A program made the translations under genes and the position numbers. 64,000 nt of DNA from Guillardia theta CCMP2712 (lineage: Eukaryota; Protista; Cryptophyta), in assembly GCF_000315625.1 (NCBI RefSeq), contig NW_005434672.1:1085374-1149373 (forward strand). The letters are read 5' to 3'. The notes beneath the pieces are model-generated. The model saw only the letters and a list, made by a program, of their open reading frames with translations, ran no database searches and was not told the DNA's origin. Below are positions 5,521-11,146 of this stretch, in pieces; the stretch's first letter is position 1, and every line of letters begins with the position of its first letter.

Positions 5521-5911
5521 AAACAATCAGGAGAGTCGAGGAGGCTTGACCCTGACACTGTCGCACCGACCAAACGGCGAAAAGAGAAAAGACTGCGAGA
5601 ACCACTGACCTAATCCTGCCGACTAATACTTTGAGTAAATACTATGATAACTTGCAGACAGGCTGCCCGGCGGGTACGGTAACAATCGCTCCGAGGCCCT
5701 GAGGGCGCGGCTAGTGCACTGCCCGGCGGTTCACGGTTGGGCCCGACAACGGTTGCTTGCCAGGATCCGCAACTTGCGGTTCCTGCCAGTGCAGCGACTC
5801 GGAAAGAGGGAGCGGAGAGGAGGAGCGAGGTTGAGCGAGGAGACGATCCTTGGCTGCGTTGCAAGGCTCTACTGAGATGCCATGGTGACTGAGTCCGACT
5901 GATTTCTCGAC

Positions 5912-8798
5912 ATGCTGGACGGGATCAATTTCGCTGGATGCACCAACGACAGAGAGTTCTCTGAGATCGAGCTGATCAGCGAGCTCATCATCTCCTACTT
6001 CCCCAACACAAGGTTTGTCCGACATGCATGTCACCCCTGCGAATGGCGGCACTACCGAGAGATGATCTGCCGCAAGTACGGGTTCGAGCATGCGGGCGAG
6101 GGCTCGATCGTGTGGCAGCGAGACGGCAAGCTGATCGGGGGCCAAGGAGAGTTGAAGAGGATACTCGAAGAGAAGTATCAGATAGAGTGTAGCTCCCACA
6201 TTCACAGCGACATGGTGCAACAACTCTTGGAGGAAAACCAGCGCCTAATGGACGAGCTCGTGGTGACAGACGGCTGGACGCCTTTCATAGGAGAGTTCCA
6301 CAAGGTCTGGAAAGAGAGGAACGAGAGTTTTGAAGGATCATGGTTGAATCACAAACCGCACAGAGGAACGTATGTCTACCATGATGGCTCCAGGTTGACG
6401 ATGAATTCTTGGACCGTTAGTTCTGATGAAGATGTAGATACGAAGGAGAATTCGTTGATGGGCATTTTGAGGGGAAAGGTCGGCAAACTTACAAAGATGG
6501 GTCGGAGTACGCTGGATCTTTTCAAAATGGCAGAAGACATGGAAAAGGTGATGGAACTATCAAGTAATGCCGGTGCTGACGGTTTTGTTTCAGGCTGGTA
6601 TCGAGATGCTGAAGGGAATGTGTATGATGGAGAATTTCTGGAAGGAGTCTGTCAGGGAGTTGGAACGAAGACCTGGACTTTCGGAAGGACTTACAAAGGG
6701 GAATGGAAACACAACAAGGCAGATGGATTGGGAGAGGAGAGCATTCCTCAGGAGGGAGATTTTCTTTTCTACTCTGGAGAGTTCGTTGATGGCAAGCGGT
6801 AATGGAGATGTCTTACCCCCGTCACCATCTATCCTGATATCATGTAGGTGTGGGTATGGCCAATGTCATTATCCGAATGGTAATGTTTACAAGGGAGACT
6901 GGAAAGACAACAAGCGTGAAGGAAAAGGAGAACTGTTTATCTTCGGGCATCCCTTGAAGCTACAGGGAGTATTTGAGGACAACACTTTCATAGGCGGGAC
7001 CTTCCGATATGATGACGTCACTACTCCCTACCCAGGAGAGGTAAGTGGATGTTGCCCAACAACTCCTCGCGACTGGCGGTGATTGTTGTCTTCAGGTGAG
7101 ATTGAACCCTCAAGGGAGCTCGGATTACTTCGACTCATATGAGTTCAAGAAAGACATCCTGCAATGGTTCGACCATGTCCAACTTCGAGCTCCAAGGAAT
7201 CAGAAGCATCCGCAGGCGTTGTGGCAGGACGGTTCCTTCTTGTCCAAGTACATCAGCAAGGAGCAAGCTGAGAGCCTGTCTTCAAGAGTCACCTCCTTGG
7301 GTCTTCAAGCGCATGATTGCATCTTGCGGGTCAAGGGCAAGCCATGTATCGTCGCTCCTGACTCTGGCGCCTTCCGGCTCTTTCCTGAGCTGCTCGTCCC
7401 TGCCATCAGAGAACGTCATGACCGGTTCGAATCGTCAGATCCACTGGAAGCAGATCGAGTGGACCCCTCGCAGCTGAAACCGTTTGACTTGTCGGAGATC
7501 AAAGCTGTCAAACGAGTCATGGTGAAGGTCTACCGCAACATCGACAGCTACGCGTTCATGTCCTCCATCAACCTAGATGAGCTCATCGAGATAGAGAAGC
7601 TCGTGCTGGAGTTCCTGGAAACAGAAGAGACATGCAGGGGAACATACTATCCGCTCTCGTCCGATGACATTCCTGTAGAAGACAAGAAGTGGCTTTTCTC
7701 AGGCAAGCAGCATGTGCTTTTAGTATTGCATAGCTGAAAATCATGGCAGAGAACATGTATCTGAACAAGTTCGATTGTGACTCCACCTTGGAATGGCCAA
7801 AATCTCGAGGGATTTTCATCAGTGAAGCAAGGAAGACGATGCTTCATGTTAATGGAAAAGAGCACCTTTGCTTCCTCTTCCTCTCCTCTCCCAGTCAACT
7901 CCCTGCCTACCTTGATTCGATGTTTGACCTCATAACTCGTTTTGAGGACTTTCTCAAGAGCAAGCAGCGTCAGTTTGCGAGCATGTACATGTTTATCCCG
8001 TGAAACCTTCACATGACGTTGTCGCCAGGAACCTGTTCGGATACCTGTACAACTCCATCGGCTTGTTGGGAACGGGCATGGAGATGAAGACGCAGGTGGT
8101 GTGTCCTGAGCTAGCGAAGCGAGAGGCTCTCTCAGCCATCTGCCGTTGCTTCGAGCTTGACTGTGACAAGCACGAGGGAGCCCTTCAGCTTCTCTCGCAC
8201 AGCAGCATCAACGTCTCTGAGTCGACCATGATCTCCCGCCTGCTGCACGCTTGTCGACAGATCTCAAAGGCAGAGCTGATCCTCCAGCAGGACCATAGCA
8301 GCCTCGACGTTTGGGAGGTGAAGCCGATCTTTTCCCTGCTGTCAAGCTCGCTGGACGCGAAGAGTCTGTCTCGAGTGGCAGCTTTCATCTCACAGAAGCT
8401 GCGCGTCAGAACTTTCATCGGCGATGACAGAGAGGAGGTGGGAAGTTTTCAAACTGATCAGGCGGAAGTCGACTATGAGAGCATGTCCTCGTTCAGAGAC
8501 GAAGGATGTATCTACATCAACTTTCCTTTTACAGCAAAACAGGTAAAACTCTCATCCGATGTGATGGATGACTTGCTGACGCTCCTTCAAGGTCGCAGCT
8601 CTTGCAGAGCGCCGCATCCTGCCTCGGAAGATTCTATTCATTGAAAGTTTGCAGGCACAAGACAATCCGAGGAGTGACAAAGTGAAATCAAAATTAGAAG
8701 AAGTTATGAGAAACAGAAGTTGCAAGATTGACATGATGAAGGCTCAGGTCGAATCCGATGAATTCTTGTATGACGTCTTGGAGGTTCTTGTGAATTGA
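5912..8798 (+). CDS. Multidomain protein: MDH1B/PPIL6-like N-terminal domain, MORN repeats, degenerate ATP:guanido phosphotransferase domain, possible adenylate-kinase-like tail (spliced)
   Basis: MORN repeats YDGEFLEGVCQGVG, YKGEWKHNKADGLG, YSGEFVDGKR and YKGDWKDNKREGKG. Arginine-kinase-like SFLSKYISKE..TSLG, VAPDSGAFRLFPELLVPAIRERH, RGTYYPL, WPKSRGIF and GYL...LGTG. Final stop TGA at 8796-8798. Confidence 0.75.
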
Positions 8799-8934
8799 TT
8801 CACATGAGAATCTATGAGGGTTCTTCACATCTCAAATGACTTTTATGAACATCTTCTAAATCACATTGCATTAAAGACACAGACGCGAGAAAATGAGCGG
8901 AGTTGACATCTGACGACAAGTCTTCTAAAACGAG

Positions 8935-11146
8935 CTAAGAGAACTCTCTCGAGAGTGTCCTTGTGTACAAGAACTCCGAGAGGATGTCAGATCCCTGTGA
9001 CAGGAGGAACTCAGCTTGCGAGGTGCTCTGCTCAAAGGCTCCTCGCCGAACGAGCGAGTCAGCTGACGAGTACATGGTTCGCTCACTCCAAGACTTGCGA
9101 GGCACGCCCTTCCTGCTCATGTCCTTGGTCTTCCTCAATGACACCACACTCTCCTCCTCATCGCACGTCTTGCTGAAGAACCCTTTCCTCTGCAGCTCCC
9201 GCCACATCCTCTCCACGTCTTCCTCGGGCTCTCTCTGCGCCGCATCCCACAGGTACTCCATCTTCTTTCCTCGGGCGGTGAACCCGGGCATCAGCTCGCC
9301 CGTCAGCTCGAAGAAGCTCGTCGGGCACTCGAACGGCTCATGGCCCAGGGCCCCGCACGCGTCGCATCGGATATGCCCCTTGTCCTTACCCGCCTTGAAC
9401 CCTACCACCTCCGCGCTCGTCGGCTTGTGAACCCCCAACTTCATCTCCGGGCCCCACGCCTGCGCATGCTCCTTGGGCTGCGCGAGGACGCTCTCTATCC
9501 TCTCGTTGGACCGGATGCTCTGAATGCCCTCCAGCCGCCTTCGATCCGCGCTGCTCGTGTGCTCCCGCCTTTGCTCCTGCTCCCGCACCTCCGGTCTTCT
9601 CTCTGTCGAGAACGAGGCTCGAAAGTTCTCCTCGGCAACCAGACACATGCTCACTTGTAGCGAAGCGTCGCCAGCCGTCTCAACGCCTCTGTCTCGTGCT
9701 TCACAGGCTTGATTGATCCATGGTTGATTCGCAAAGATGTAAGCCTCTTGCAAGTTGGTTCTCACCAGAGACTCTACAAGATTCCCACGTGTCGAGTAGC
9801 CCACGTTGTTCAGCGCAAACAGAACCTTCAAGCTGTTGTTGAACCTCAAGGATTGCAGAATTCCTTTCAGGCCATGTTGAGTTATTCTCGTGTCATTGAT
9901 GATCAATCTTTGTAGTTTCCTGTTCGACACAAGAAACTTTGCAAGGTGGTTCGCCCCGGCAACTCCGAGATCATTGGAAGAGACATCCAACAGCTCTACG
10001 GTAGTGTTTGCCATCATGCCCTCTAGCATGCATCGAATGCTCGCAGGTCCGATGTTGTTGTCGCTGAGATTCAGCGTCTTTAGCTGACAGCGATTCTCTT
10101 GCAAGACTTGTCCAAGGAGAGAAAACGACCTGAAGGACTGATTTCTTCTTTCCTCATCGTTCTCCTCAATGTACTTCATTTCTCCGATGTTGTTCTTCAG
10201 GCAGTGGAACGACTCAAGGTCTTCAGAAACCTTCATTCCGAGTACGAGCTTCTCGAAGCCGAATGGCCCAAGGGAGTTGTCAGCAAGGAACACAGTCTTC
10301 AAACATCGCCCTGCCCTCTTGTCGAGGGACAAGATGCCTTGCGGGAGACAAGGCTTGACAGTGAGAGTCATGCTCTCAGCAACTTCAAACTCGTTCACAA
10401 GACAAGAGATGCCCACAAACACGTCAGCTCCTCTGTCCACCAGCCTTAGCAAGCGCAAGTCATCCATCCCTCCCGGCTGTTGGGAGAAGAGGAGGATCTC
10501 ACTTGTGGTGATAGGAATGACAATCTTCACATGCGCATCCTCATTGTCTCCCATATCTGCCTTCACACGAACATCAAGATACTCCATCTCCTCCCTTCTC
10601 ATGCGCCTGCAGTGCATGACGCTGTCAGCGTATCCTGCCGGACCTTTCAAGTGCTGCACGTCTTCCTCGATCTCTCTCTTGGCTTCCTCGCAGTCAGCCA
10701 AGACTCTCGTCAGGTTGTCTATCGCTGAGCTCAGGTTGTCCGACCTGTCGCGGTAGAACTCAACGGTGAATGATTTGGACTTGTCTATGAATTCACTCAG
10801 GGAAGGTCTGCTGCCCTCGTCCAGTTTGTTGTACTCTCTCAGCACATCTCTCTTCGCCTTCGACAGGTTCATGCCCGTACGAAAGACATGCTCATGTGCT
10901 GGAACACAAGTCAGCTTCAACCACCCGCGCACTCTCGCTCCCTCCTCTCCTACCTCTGTACAACTTGTCCTCCTCATTGTCTGCCTTGTCCAGCAGTCGC
11001 TGGAAGGAGGTGTTGGGGATGTGCCATCCGTTGGTCTTGGCCATGTCAGCAGGCATGAACCTCAGCCCGTCATGCAGGTGCTGCCTGTCCCTTAGCGGCA
11101 CTTCCTGCATCGACCGATGTGCGCTCGTCGACGGCCTGCTCGCCAT
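8935..11146 (-). CDS. Ribonuclease-inhibitor-type LRR protein with a C-terminal CCHC zinc knuckle (one 5' intron)
   Basis: LADNSLGPFG, LKTLNLSDNNIGPAS and LLDVSSNDLGVAGA repeats; CDACGALGHEPFEC fits CX2CX4HX4C. Confidence 0.75.

What the first reader, a model, noticed from the sequence alone, without database searches (positions are those of the whole stretch)
5912..8798. Candidate flagellar scaffold: MDH1B/PPIL6-like N-terminus + MORN + dead phosphagen kinase + adenylate-kinase-like tail
Seen: the N-terminal ~110 aa (AGC...ELI...FP......HP.EW....CRKYGF.H....IVW..DGKLIGG..EL....E.KY.......EN) resemble the glutaredoxin-like N-terminus of the ciliary proteins MDH1B and PPIL6. At least 4 MORN repeats follow, then an arginine-kinase fold with NEEDH changed to NGKEH and CPTNLGT changed to SIGLLGT (catalytic Glu and Cys lost), then GCIYINFPFTAKQ, reminiscent of the adenylate kinase GxxxDGFPRTxxQ motif. 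Established: PPIL6/RSP12, MORN proteins and adenylate kinases are radial-spoke/axonemal components, and phosphagen kinases buffer flagellar ATP. Inference: a single-chain fusion of radial-spoke modules using pseudo-enzymes as scaffold or nucleotide sensor. I do not recognise this architecture.
Basis: partly seen in the sequence, partly recalled or inferred. Interest (0 to 1): 0.75.

Follow-up and report, generated by a model that had tools for sequence, protein, structure and literature searches.

The report
Spoke-type pseudo-enzyme scaffold gene in cryptophytes
This Guillardia theta gene makes one 850-residue protein that joins the small docking domain of the ciliary radial-spoke proteins MDH1B and PPIL6 to MORN repeats, a catalytically dead phosphagen (arginine) kinase and an eroded adenylate kinase; the family is conserved in cryptophyte algae, is cut short in the public annotation, and is probably a structural part of the flagellum.

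Summary
Window 5912-8798 (+) is one eight-exon gene of Guillardia theta CCMP2712. A spliced RNA-derived contig (L017), 100% identical to the window, removes seven 44-55 nt introns and gives one 850-aa ORF. The public model XP_005842018.1 stops at 343 aa inside intron 4.

- **N-terminal domain (residues 1-119):** a profile hits the MDH1B N-terminus at E 9e-23. The AlphaFold model (pLDDT 93) matches MDH1B (TM 0.82) and PPIL6 (TM 0.74) in solved radial spokes, well above glutaredoxins (below 0.5).
- **MORN repeats:** Pfam finds seven.
- **Phosphagen kinase:** real (PF00217, 45 bits), but the catalytic Glu and Cys and nearly all the phosphate-binding arginines tested are replaced, here and in 13 orthologues.
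- **Tail:** orthologues, including a Teleaulax transcript, carry a P-loop-less adenylate kinase at this position. The G. theta tail is a shortened remnant with only weak similarity (E 1e-3).

Flagellar radial-spoke location is inferred, not shown. All the close solved relatives of the docking domain (TM 0.64-0.82) sit in axonemal complexes, four of five in radial spokes. This gene was the only match to the domain profile in the genome.

Verdict: a new domain architecture built from known parts, undescribed in the searched papers.

The parts
5912..6393 (+). Exon 1 (start codon 5912; residues 1-160 and part of 161)
   Evidence: Block 1 of the spliced RNA contig L017 covers 5877-6393 at 100% identity. 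There is an in-frame stop at 5900-5902.
6438..6547 (+). Exon 2 (MORN repeats), after the 44-nt GT-AG intron 6394-6437
   Evidence: the same junction is in public model P0001
6594..6798 (+). Exon 3 (MORN repeats), after the 46-nt intron 6548-6593
6848..7040 (+). Exon 4 (last MORN repeats), after the 49-nt intron 6799-6847
7041..7095 (+). Intron 4 (55 nt). The public model XP_005842018.1 retains it and ends at the TGA at 7080-7082, giving 343 aa.
   Evidence: P0001 maps up to 7079. The RNA contig skips 7041-7095.
7096..7702 (+). Exon 5: phosphagen kinase N-domain and the first part of the catalytic domain (residues 331-532)
   Evidence: phmmer against PDB arginine kinases, E 1.3e-19
7703..7749 (+). 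Intron 5, 47 nt, non-canonical GC-AG
   Evidence: sequence; removed in L017
7750..7984 (+). Exon 6: catalytic-domain core with WPKSRGIF and NGKEH (7851-7865)
8029..8542 (+). Exon 7: rest of the kinase domain (SIGLLGT at 8054-8074; domain ends near 8290) and the first part of the tail
8592..8798 (+). Exon 8 after the 49-nt intron 8543-8591: end of the tail and stop codon TGA 8796-8798
5912..6268 (+). MDH1B/PPIL6-type N-terminal domain: glutaredoxin-like fold (residues 1-98) plus a long linker helix (99-119)
   Evidence: Profile A1 against PDB: MDH1B E 9.4e-23. AF2 pLDDT 93. Foldseek TM 0.82 / 0.74. Atlas search.
6326..7040 (+). MORN repeat array (about 7-8 repeats, residues about 139-330, interrupted by introns 1-3)
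   Evidence: Pfam PF02493, 94.6 bits, 7 stretches; regex count
7228..8290 (+). Pseudo-phosphagen kinase: PF02807-like region (residues 375-434) and PF00217 (residues 496-654, extending to about 698)
   Evidence: Pfam PF00217 45.4 bits against cut-off 22.4; PF02807 20.3 bits against cut-off 25.7; catalytic residues replaced
8306..8795 (+). Eroded adenylate-kinase-derived tail (residues 704-850), including GCIYINFPFTAKQ at 8504-8542
   Evidence: Positional homology to the orthologues' ADK-like domain: BLASTP E 1e-3, hhalign E 0.016, MAFFT alignment. AF2 pLDDT 63 with a beta-alpha-beta core. Weak Foldseek hits to adenylate kinases. No Pfam or NCBIfam ADK hit.

Best explanation
The stretch is a single expressed gene of Guillardia theta that encodes an 850-residue protein with four modules. 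(1) An N-terminal glutaredoxin-like domain plus linker helix, homologous to the N-domain that anchors MDH1B in the neck of radial spoke 3. The same fold is found in the spoke-head protein PPIL6. (2) About seven MORN repeats, which form an elongated beta-sheet arm. (3) A phosphagen (arginine) kinase domain that keeps the fold but has lost the catalytic Glu, the reactive Cys and nearly all the phosphate-binding arginines tested (one of the R-x-R trio is kept). (4) A shortened, P-loop-less remnant of an adenylate kinase. I propose that it is a non-catalytic structural subunit of the flagellar axoneme. The N-domain would dock it on a radial spoke, most likely on the CFAP91 backbone of RS3. The MORN array and the two fossil enzymes would serve as a rigid arm or strut. 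The likely origin is a spoke-tethered ATP-buffering enzyme pair. Shown: the gene structure, the single mRNA, the domain homologies, the loss of catalytic residues, and conservation across cryptophytes. Inferred: the axonemal location, the docking partner and the purely structural role.
For: Gene and transcript: the contig L017 is 100% identical to the window in 9 blocks with every intron removed, and it translates to 850 aa.

N-domain:
- An exhaustive phmmer search found 37 relatives.
- Their profile hits MDH1B residues 1-116 at E 9.4e-23 and 2.5e-22, with PPIL6 third.
- The AF2 model has pLDDT 93.
- The five best PDB fold matches are all chains of axonemal cryo-EM structures: MDH1B twice, PPIL6 and a near-identical-length chain of the bovine-sperm entry (9fqr_HZ, by size probably PPIL6), and a T. 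brucei doublet chain (TM 0.64-0.82). Glutaredoxins follow at TM 0.5 or below.
- The Atlas search agrees and adds clusters whose commonest phyla are Oomycota and Haptophyta.

Literature:
- The MDH1B N-domain contacts CFAP91, C10orf53 and AK9 in mouse RS3, where enzymes act as struts (bioRxiv 10.1101/2025.05.19.654877).
- A Tetrahymena protein that resembles MDH1B only in this N-terminal part drops in the RS3-less CFAP91 knockout (PMC12399478).

Genome: this gene is the only match to the N-domain profile in G. theta, and CFAP91 is present.

Pseudo-enzyme: the substitutions were mapped in G. theta and 13 orthologues. The ADK P-loop is absent in all 11 aligned orthologue tails.

Conservation: there are 12 clusters of 884-1685 aa at 48-55% identity to P0005, with the same Pfam set. 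G. theta aligns end to end with them (E 1e-101 to 1e-107).
Against: MORN repeats, phosphagen kinases and adenylate kinases also occur outside cilia. The G. theta copy is much more divergent than the other family members (about 28% against about 50% identity), and its tail is hardly recognisable. This could mean relaxed constraint. A UPF0728/C10orf53 partner was not found in the genome, although that search had no positive control. The sequence link to PPIL6 is not significant on its own (E 0.25).
Confidence: 0.6

Rival explanations
1. The same protein is a cytoplasmic or membrane-associated scaffold with no link to the axoneme. The MORN repeats would tether it to membranes or cytoskeleton (for example the periplast, the ejectisome or the basal apparatus), and the N-domain would be a general protein-binding module.
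For: MORN repeats are generic. The N-domain is also fused to unrelated enzyme folds (ADH-like, isochorismatase-like, Ap4A-phosphorylase-like) in uncharacterised protist proteins of unknown location. No localisation data exist.
Against: All five close solved-structure relatives of the N-domain are axonemal chains, and glutaredoxins follow only at TM 0.5 or below. The one experimentally studied protist protein with only this domain depends on RS3. The named clusters found by shape are MDH1B and PPIL6 of chordates; two unnamed ones are commonest in Oomycota and Haptophyta, and the family members whose species is known, Guillardia and Teleaulax, are cryptophytes.
Confidence: 0.22
2. The kinase-like domains are still functional: either enzymes with non-canonical chemistry (for example a protein-arginine kinase like McsB) or allosteric nucleotide or phosphagen sensors that tune flagellar beating to energy state.
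For: Most orthologues keep the second Glu of the NEEDH motif (N-K-E-E/D-H). The fold-defining motifs (WP..RGIF, YYPL, GT.M) are conserved. There are weak NCBIfam hits to McsB-type models (E 9e-9). The orthologue ADK domains keep the LID-like Arg cluster.
Against: In all 14 aligned sequences, the Arg after NEEDH, the Arg after the Cys motif, and the whole R...E loop are replaced. The Cys is replaced in every sequence that aligns there. In G. theta the Glu is Lys. The McsB scores are 10 to 25 times below their cut-offs and reflect generic family homology. No ADK domain has a P-loop Lys. The G. theta tail lacks the NMP-binding and LID segments.
Confidence: 0.1
3. In G. theta specifically, the gene is a decaying, functionless leftover of the cryptophyte family. 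It is transcribed but no longer under selection.
For: The G. theta copy is the most divergent member, has lost roughly 100 residues of the ADK domain, and has the most degenerate motifs.
Against: An 850-codon frame is intact across eight exons. All seven introns, one of them GC-AG, are correctly spliced in RNA. The N-domain model is highly confident. The MORN repeats and kinase-fold motifs are well preserved.
Confidence: 0.08

Closest known systems
MDH1B (putative malate dehydrogenase 1B), radial spoke 3 neck subunit of mammals (PDB 9d2f_F, 9fqr_Xq)
   Same: Same N-terminal glutaredoxin-like domain followed by a single linker helix (profile E 9e-23; TM 0.82). Same design logic: a docking domain joined to an enzyme fold that is used structurally.
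   Different: The cargo is a MORN array, a dead phosphagen kinase and an ADK relic, not a malate dehydrogenase fold. There is no evidence yet that it sits in RS3.
PPIL6 / RSP12 (probable inactive peptidyl-prolyl isomerase-like 6), radial spoke 1/2 head (PDB 8j07_S; 9fqr_HZ is probably the bovine copy, judged by size only)
   Same: Same N-domain fold (TM 0.73-0.74, Foldseek E 4e-6). An inactive enzyme domain follows it.
   Different: Sequence similarity is not significant on its own (E 0.25). The cargo is a cyclophilin fold.
Arginine, taurocyamine and creatine kinases (ATP:guanido phosphotransferases, PF02807 + PF00217), including the flagellar phosphagen shuttles of sea-urchin sperm, trypanosomes and ciliates
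   Same: Homologous two-domain fold (E 1.3e-19 to PDB 4rf6; PF00217 at 45 bits). G. theta also has bona fide copies with intact motifs.
   Different: The catalytic Glu, the reactive Cys and the phosphate-binding Arg residues are replaced, here and across the family. It is embedded in a four-module protein.
Axonemal adenylate kinases AK7, AK8 and AK9 of radial spokes
   Same: The ADK-derived domain of the orthologues scores best against AK9 of mouse RS3 (E 5e-14). In RS3 these kinases double as struts.
   Different: There is no P-loop in any family member. The G. theta version is cut down to a minimal five-strand core of about 145 residues with only weak similarity. No DPY30 or RIIa docking motif was seen.
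MORN proteins of radial spokes (RSPH1/RSP1, RSPH10B/RSP10, MORN5, FAP207)
   Same: A tandem MORN array (7 Pfam stretches), as in the spoke head, stalk and base proteins cited in PMC12399478.
   Different: No orthology to any of them was tested or shown. MORN repeats are widespread outside cilia.

Membership tests
ATP:guanido phosphotransferase (phosphagen kinase) family | Match to the catalytic-domain profile PF00217 above the gathering score | tested here: met
   45.4 bits against cut-off 22.4, E 8e-12, residues 496-654 of the full protein. Single exons alone were sub-threshold.
ATP:guanido phosphotransferase (phosphagen kinase) family | N-terminal helical domain PF02807 | tested here: inconclusive
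   20.3 bits against cut-off 25.7. However, phmmer alignments to PDB arginine kinases run through this region (E 1.3e-19).
ATP:guanido phosphotransferase (phosphagen kinase) family | Catalytic apparatus: Glu of NEEDH, Cys of CP(T/S)NLGT, phosphate-binding Arg residues, and the R...E loop | tested here: not met
   NEEDH-x-R becomes NGKEH-x-C. C-P-S-N-L-G-T-G-L-R becomes S-I-G-L-L-G-T-G-M-E. The R...E loop is deleted or replaced. The protein is therefore a homologue but not an active member, that is, a pseudo-enzyme.
MDH1B/PPIL6-type N-terminal domain (no Pfam family matched) | Sequence-profile similarity to the MDH1B N-terminus | tested here: met
   The single sequence gives E 1.1e-3. The profile of 29 relatives gives E 9.4e-23 and 2.5e-22 over MDH1B residues 1-116.
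MDH1B/PPIL6-type N-terminal domain (no Pfam family matched) | Same fold plus trailing helix, closer to MDH1B and PPIL6 than to ordinary glutaredoxins | tested here: met
   AF2 pLDDT 93. TM 0.82 (MDH1B) and 0.74 (PPIL6) against 0.5 or below for glutaredoxins.
MDH1B/PPIL6-type N-terminal domain (no Pfam family matched) | Sequence similarity to PPIL6 itself | tested here: inconclusive
   PPIL6 (8j07_S) is the third-best PDB hit and matches at the right place, but E is 0.25.
MORN repeat proteins | Tandem PF02493 repeats above the gathering score | tested here: met
   94.6 bits, 7 stretches; six regular Y-x-G-x-[FW] units by pattern.
Adenylate kinase (PF00406 / TIGR01351) | Profile match of the G. 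theta tail | tested here: not met
   No Pfam or NCBIfam ADK hit, even at E 10. The orthologue ADK profile finds nothing in any frame of 8200-9100.
Adenylate kinase (PF00406 / TIGR01351) | Homology of the tail to the ADK-derived domain of the orthologues | tested here: inconclusive
   The orthologue tails are ADK-derived: PF00406 at 26.7 bits against cut-off 26.8, TIGR01351 E 2.5e-15, PDB AK9 E 5e-14. G. theta tail against P0076: BLASTP E 1e-3 over 76 columns, in the right order. hhalign E 0.016 but probability only 2.8%. Fold model pLDDT 63, with ADKs among weak hits.
Adenylate kinase (PF00406 / TIGR01351) | P-loop G-x-P-G-x-G-K-G-T and the Arg of D-G-F-P-R-T | tested here: not met
   The P-loop position reads G-A-x-E-x-L-A-D-D in the orthologues and S-S-S-L-D-A-K-S in G. 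theta. G-F-P-A-S and N-F-P-F-T replace G-F-P-R-T.
Radial spoke subunit | Physical presence in the axoneme or radial spoke | not testable with these tools
   Indirect support only: the close solved relatives of the N-domain are all axonemal chains, four of five in radial spokes; the Tetrahymena N-domain-only protein depends on RS3; the CFAP91 gene is present.

The most novel reading that the evidence does not exclude
The MDH1B/PPIL6 N-domain may be a general, ancient 'spoke-docking adaptor' that delivers different enzyme or pseudo-enzyme cargos to radial spokes in different eukaryotic lineages. In cryptophytes the cargo would be a fossilised phosphagen-kinase plus adenylate-kinase pair on a MORN arm. 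That would mean an ancestral spoke-tethered ATP-buffering relay was turned into a purely structural RS3 strut, which in G. theta would take the place that MDH1B's N-domain occupies in mammals.
Probability: 0.35. Interest if true: 0.75.

Novelty: new variant of a known kind. Interest (0 to 1): 0.6.

Why it matters
The mouse RS3 structure read here describes radial spoke 3 as a hub of metabolic enzymes that also act as struts, while the RS3 protein sets reported for mammals and Tetrahymena differ. This family offers a lineage-specific candidate subunit that can be tested directly. It links the spoke-docking domain of MDH1B and PPIL6 to two further energy-metabolism folds, both catalytically dead. 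If the location is confirmed, two things follow. The small N-domain would be a portable spoke-targeting module. Enzyme-to-scaffold conversion would be a recurring route in axoneme evolution. On the practical side, the public G. theta model (XP_005842018.1, 343 aa, 'hypothetical / MORN repeat-containing protein') should be replaced by an 850-aa, eight-exon model with one GC-AG intron.

Tried and rejected
The transcript evidence comes from the spliced public contig L017.
- My first model of the last intron (8543-8654) was wrong. L017 shows 8543-8591.
- With the wrong splice, the orthologue ADK profile found nothing in the tail. With the right splice, the similarity is weak but correctly placed.
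- The look-up of encoding contigs had no record of P0001.
- The Teleaulax ADK domain does not find the window's tail in the G. theta genome. It finds a seven-domain adenylate kinase gene instead.
- UPF0728/C10orf53 was not found in the genome, and that search had no positive control, so it says nothing.
- Possible synteny with an LRR gene next to the orthologue was checked. Only generic RNI-type LRR similarity was found (24% identity), so I do not count it.
- Cluster look-ups gave no taxon names for most N-domain relatives, so a ciliated/non-ciliated phylogenetic profile could not be made.
- Paper searches for the locus tag, and for phosphagen kinase + MORN + flagell*, found nothing.
- Complex prediction was not run. 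The likely partner segment, the C-terminal hook of G. theta CFAP91, lies in exons I could not define without transcripts.
Exon pieces were searched by reference, and the full-length protein was read only from the natural spliced contig L017.
Full report
**Organism and locus.** The window is contig C2:1085374-1149373 of an 87.1-Mb, 669-contig assembly. The protein encoded at the start of the finding is identical to XP_005842018.1 / GUITHDRAFT_83912 of Guillardia theta CCMP2712, named 'hypothetical protein' and, in UniRef, 'MORN repeat-containing protein'. This confirms the 'cryptophyte, G. theta-like' label in earlier notes of the scan.

**Gene structure.** Mechanical ORFs break the region into five frames. 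I first read the pieces exon by exon, by reference, and joined nothing myself. The public model P0001 (343 aa) revealed two further in-frame introns inside the first ORF. It also showed that the public model runs into an intron and stops at 7080-7082.

The 90% cluster of P0001 holds a second member, P0080 (800 aa), encoded on the JGI contig L017 (4879 nt). blastn of L017 against the window gives nine blocks at 100% identity:
- 5877-6393
- 6438-6547
- 6594-6798
- 6848-7040
- 7096-7702
- 7750-7984
- 8029-8542
- 8592-10900
- 10954-11144

A sequence identical to the genome with exactly the GT-AG intervals removed (GC-AG in one case) can only come from spliced RNA. L017:36-2585 translates to one 850-residue ORF. 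Its ATG is at window 5912, preceded by an in-frame stop at 5900-5902, and its stop is at 8796-8798. The seven introns measure 44, 46, 49, 55, 47, 44 and 49 nt. The fifth is GC-AG. My own first guess for the last intron (8543-8654) was wrong.

**N-terminal domain.** An exhaustive phmmer search with residues 1-120 against 1.8 billion representatives found 37 proteins. Besides the orthologues described below, they carry the domain in front of several other cargos:
- ADH-like domains
- isochorismatase-like domains
- Ap4A-phosphorylase-like domains
- C-terminal parts with no Pfam match

The single sequence already hits MDH1B in the PDB (E 1.1e-3). A profile of 29 relatives (A1) hits MDH1B residues 1-116 at E 9.4e-23 (mouse RS3, 9d2f_F) and 2.5e-22 (bovine sperm, 9fqr_Xq). 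PPIL6 (8j07_S, residues 33-128) is third at E 0.25.

The AlphaFold model is confident (pLDDT 93). It has a beta-alpha-beta-alpha-beta-beta-alpha thioredoxin-type fold and a 20-residue trailing helix. Foldseek ranks five chains of axonemal cryo-EM structures first:
- MDH1B, twice (TM 0.82)
- PPIL6 (8j07_S, TM 0.74) and a 291-residue chain of the bovine-sperm entry (9fqr_HZ, TM 0.73; the output names only the entry, so I take it for PPIL6 by size alone)
- a T. brucei doublet chain (TM 0.64)
Ordinary glutaredoxins follow at TM 0.5 or below. The ESM Atlas search gives the same picture and adds clusters whose commonest phyla are Oomycota and Haptophyta. The glutaredoxin active-site position is not conserved in the family (A1), so a redox role is unlikely.

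The link is strong for MDH1B, and for PPIL6 it rests on structure.

**MORN repeats.** Pfam scores the full protein at 94.6 bits with seven stretches. Six units fit a regular Y-x-G-x-[FW] pattern. Two of them are hidden in the genomic reading by introns 1 and 2.

**Phosphagen kinase.**
- Exon 5 alone matches arginine kinases in the PDB at E 1.3e-19.
- The full protein passes the PF00217 gathering score (45.4 bits against 22.4).
- PF02807 stays just below its cut-off (20.3 bits against 25.7).

I aligned the domain with a bona fide G. theta kinase that has intact motifs (L001) and with 13 orthologues. The functional positions named below are from my knowledge of the arginine kinase transition-state structure:
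- The Glu-Glu-Asp of NEEDH reads G-K-E, and the following Arg is Cys.
- The reactive Cys is Ser, and the Arg six residues after the motif is Glu.
- The loop carrying the last Arg and the second catalytic Glu is deleted.
- Of the R-x-R-x-x-R trio at the start of the catalytic domain, only the last Arg remains.

The orthologues mostly read N-K-E-E/D-H, so one Glu is kept. They share the loss of both downstream Arg residues and of the R...E loop, and the Cys is replaced in every sequence that aligns at that position. This is a long-standing pseudo-enzyme, not a recent accident.

**Orthologues and the tail.**
- Architecture. P0005 (1018 aa, one uninterrupted ORF on Tara-type marine metagenome contigs), P0007 and P0055 (1120 aa, a complete ORF from a Teleaulax amphioxeia transcriptome) and nine further clusters of 884-1685 aa (48-55% identity to P0005) all have the N-domain, MORN, PF02807 and PF00217. 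About half also carry a precomputed PF00406 hit.
- ADK origin of their tails. These tails (A3) are clearly adenylate-kinase-derived: E 5e-14 to AK9 of mouse RS3, 9e-12 to a plant adenylate kinase and about 1e-7 to the E. coli enzyme, TIGR01351 E 2.5e-15, and PF00406 at 26.7 bits against 26.8. All of them lack the P-loop lysine and the Arg of G-F-P-R-T.
- Alignment with G. theta. The G. theta protein aligns with these orthologues from residue 1 to beyond residue 715 (E 1e-101 to 1e-107).
- The G. theta tail. Its last 147 residues are much shorter than the roughly 250-residue orthologue domain. MAFFT places two large deletions at the NMP-binding segment and in the C-terminal third.
- Fold model. 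An AlphaFold model built on that alignment is only moderately confident (pLDDT 63), but it shows a five-strand beta-alpha core. Its weak Foldseek hits (E 2e-3 to 2e-2, TM about 0.5) are mostly adenylate and related P-loop kinases, including axonemal AK7, AK8 and AK9. Because the alignment contains ADK-derived rows, this model is not independent evidence.
- Profile libraries. Pfam and NCBIfam see no adenylate kinase in G. theta.

I conclude that the tail is an eroded adenylate kinase core. This is well supported by position and by the orthologues, and weakly by its own sequence.

**Function.**
- Mouse RS3. In the cryo-EM work, the MDH1B N-domain, joined to the enzyme body by a single helix, is a spacer between neck and stalk. 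It contacts CFAP91, C10orf53 and AK9, and the enzymes of RS3 act as load-bearing struts (bioRxiv 10.1101/2025.05.19.654877).
- Spoke heads. PPIL6 sits in the heads of RS1 and RS2 next to AK8, RSPH1 and CAMK4 (PMC11779644).
- Tetrahymena. A protein similar to MDH1B only in the first 66 residues is significantly reduced in the RS3-less CFAP91 knockout (PMC12399478).
- G. theta genome. This gene is the only match to the N-domain profile. CFAP91 is present 72 kb away on the same contig.

The best-supported reading is therefore a non-catalytic axonemal scaffold that docks through its N-domain. The MORN sheet and the two fossil enzyme folds would form an arm or strut. The location and the partner are inferred, not shown.

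**Rivals.**
- A non-axonemal MORN scaffold.
- A residual sensor or non-canonical enzyme. The loss of the phosphate-binding arginines and of the P-loop argues against it.
- A decaying gene in G. theta. The intact, correctly spliced 850-codon frame argues against it.

**Novelty.** No paper in the searched library mentions the locus tag or this combination of domains. All parts are known folds, and the design of a docking domain plus a pseudo-enzyme has precedents in MDH1B and PPIL6. I therefore rate it a new variant of a known kind: a cryptophyte family with a new four-module architecture. The public G. theta annotation also needs correction.

Noticed in passing
L018 2942-7696 (-) = G000:C3:415941-420695: A single 1584-aa ORF with seven tandem adenylate kinase domains. 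Five are near-identical repeats with intact P-loops. It ends in a DPY30-like motif, which resembles the spoke-anchored AK7/AK9 type of flagellar adenylate kinase.
   Followed up: partly
window 8935-11144 (-): A convergent gene for an RNI-type leucine-rich-repeat protein with a CCHC zinc knuckle. Its stop lies only about 137 nt from the stop of the finding's gene. The RNA contig L017 runs through both genes, so the 3' UTRs overlap or abut. Its intron 10901-10953 is spliced out in L017.
   Followed up: partly
window 7041-7095: The public model XP_005842018.1 retains this intron and ends at 343 aa. It is not known whether an intron-retaining mRNA that makes an N-domain + MORN-only product really exists.
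   Followed up: no
L016 640-2250 (-) = G000:C2:1220218-1221828: The first large exon of the G. theta CFAP91 orthologue (PF14738, E 2.7e-44), about 72 kb downstream of the window on the same contig. Its C-terminal exons were not defined.
   Followed up: partly
P0008 (2817 aa) and P0013 (2877 aa), hits: Two very long environmental proteins match a segment of the N-domain 25 and 9 times over. This could be a tandem array of the domain or a compositional artefact.
   Followed up: no
P0073 (1685 aa) and P0006 (707 aa): Variant architectures in the family. P0073 has a long extra region with a precomputed ricin-B-lectin-type Pfam hit ahead of the kinase. P0006 has the N-domain and MORN repeats, followed by an unrelated C-terminal part with no kinase.
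   Followed up: no
L002-L005 (G000:C8:978758-980842 and C144:16417-18321): Two loci each hold two full PF00217 domains in one 932-943-aa open frame. They appear to be contiguous two-domain phosphagen kinases with intact-scoring domains, next to single-domain copies on C26.
   Followed up: no
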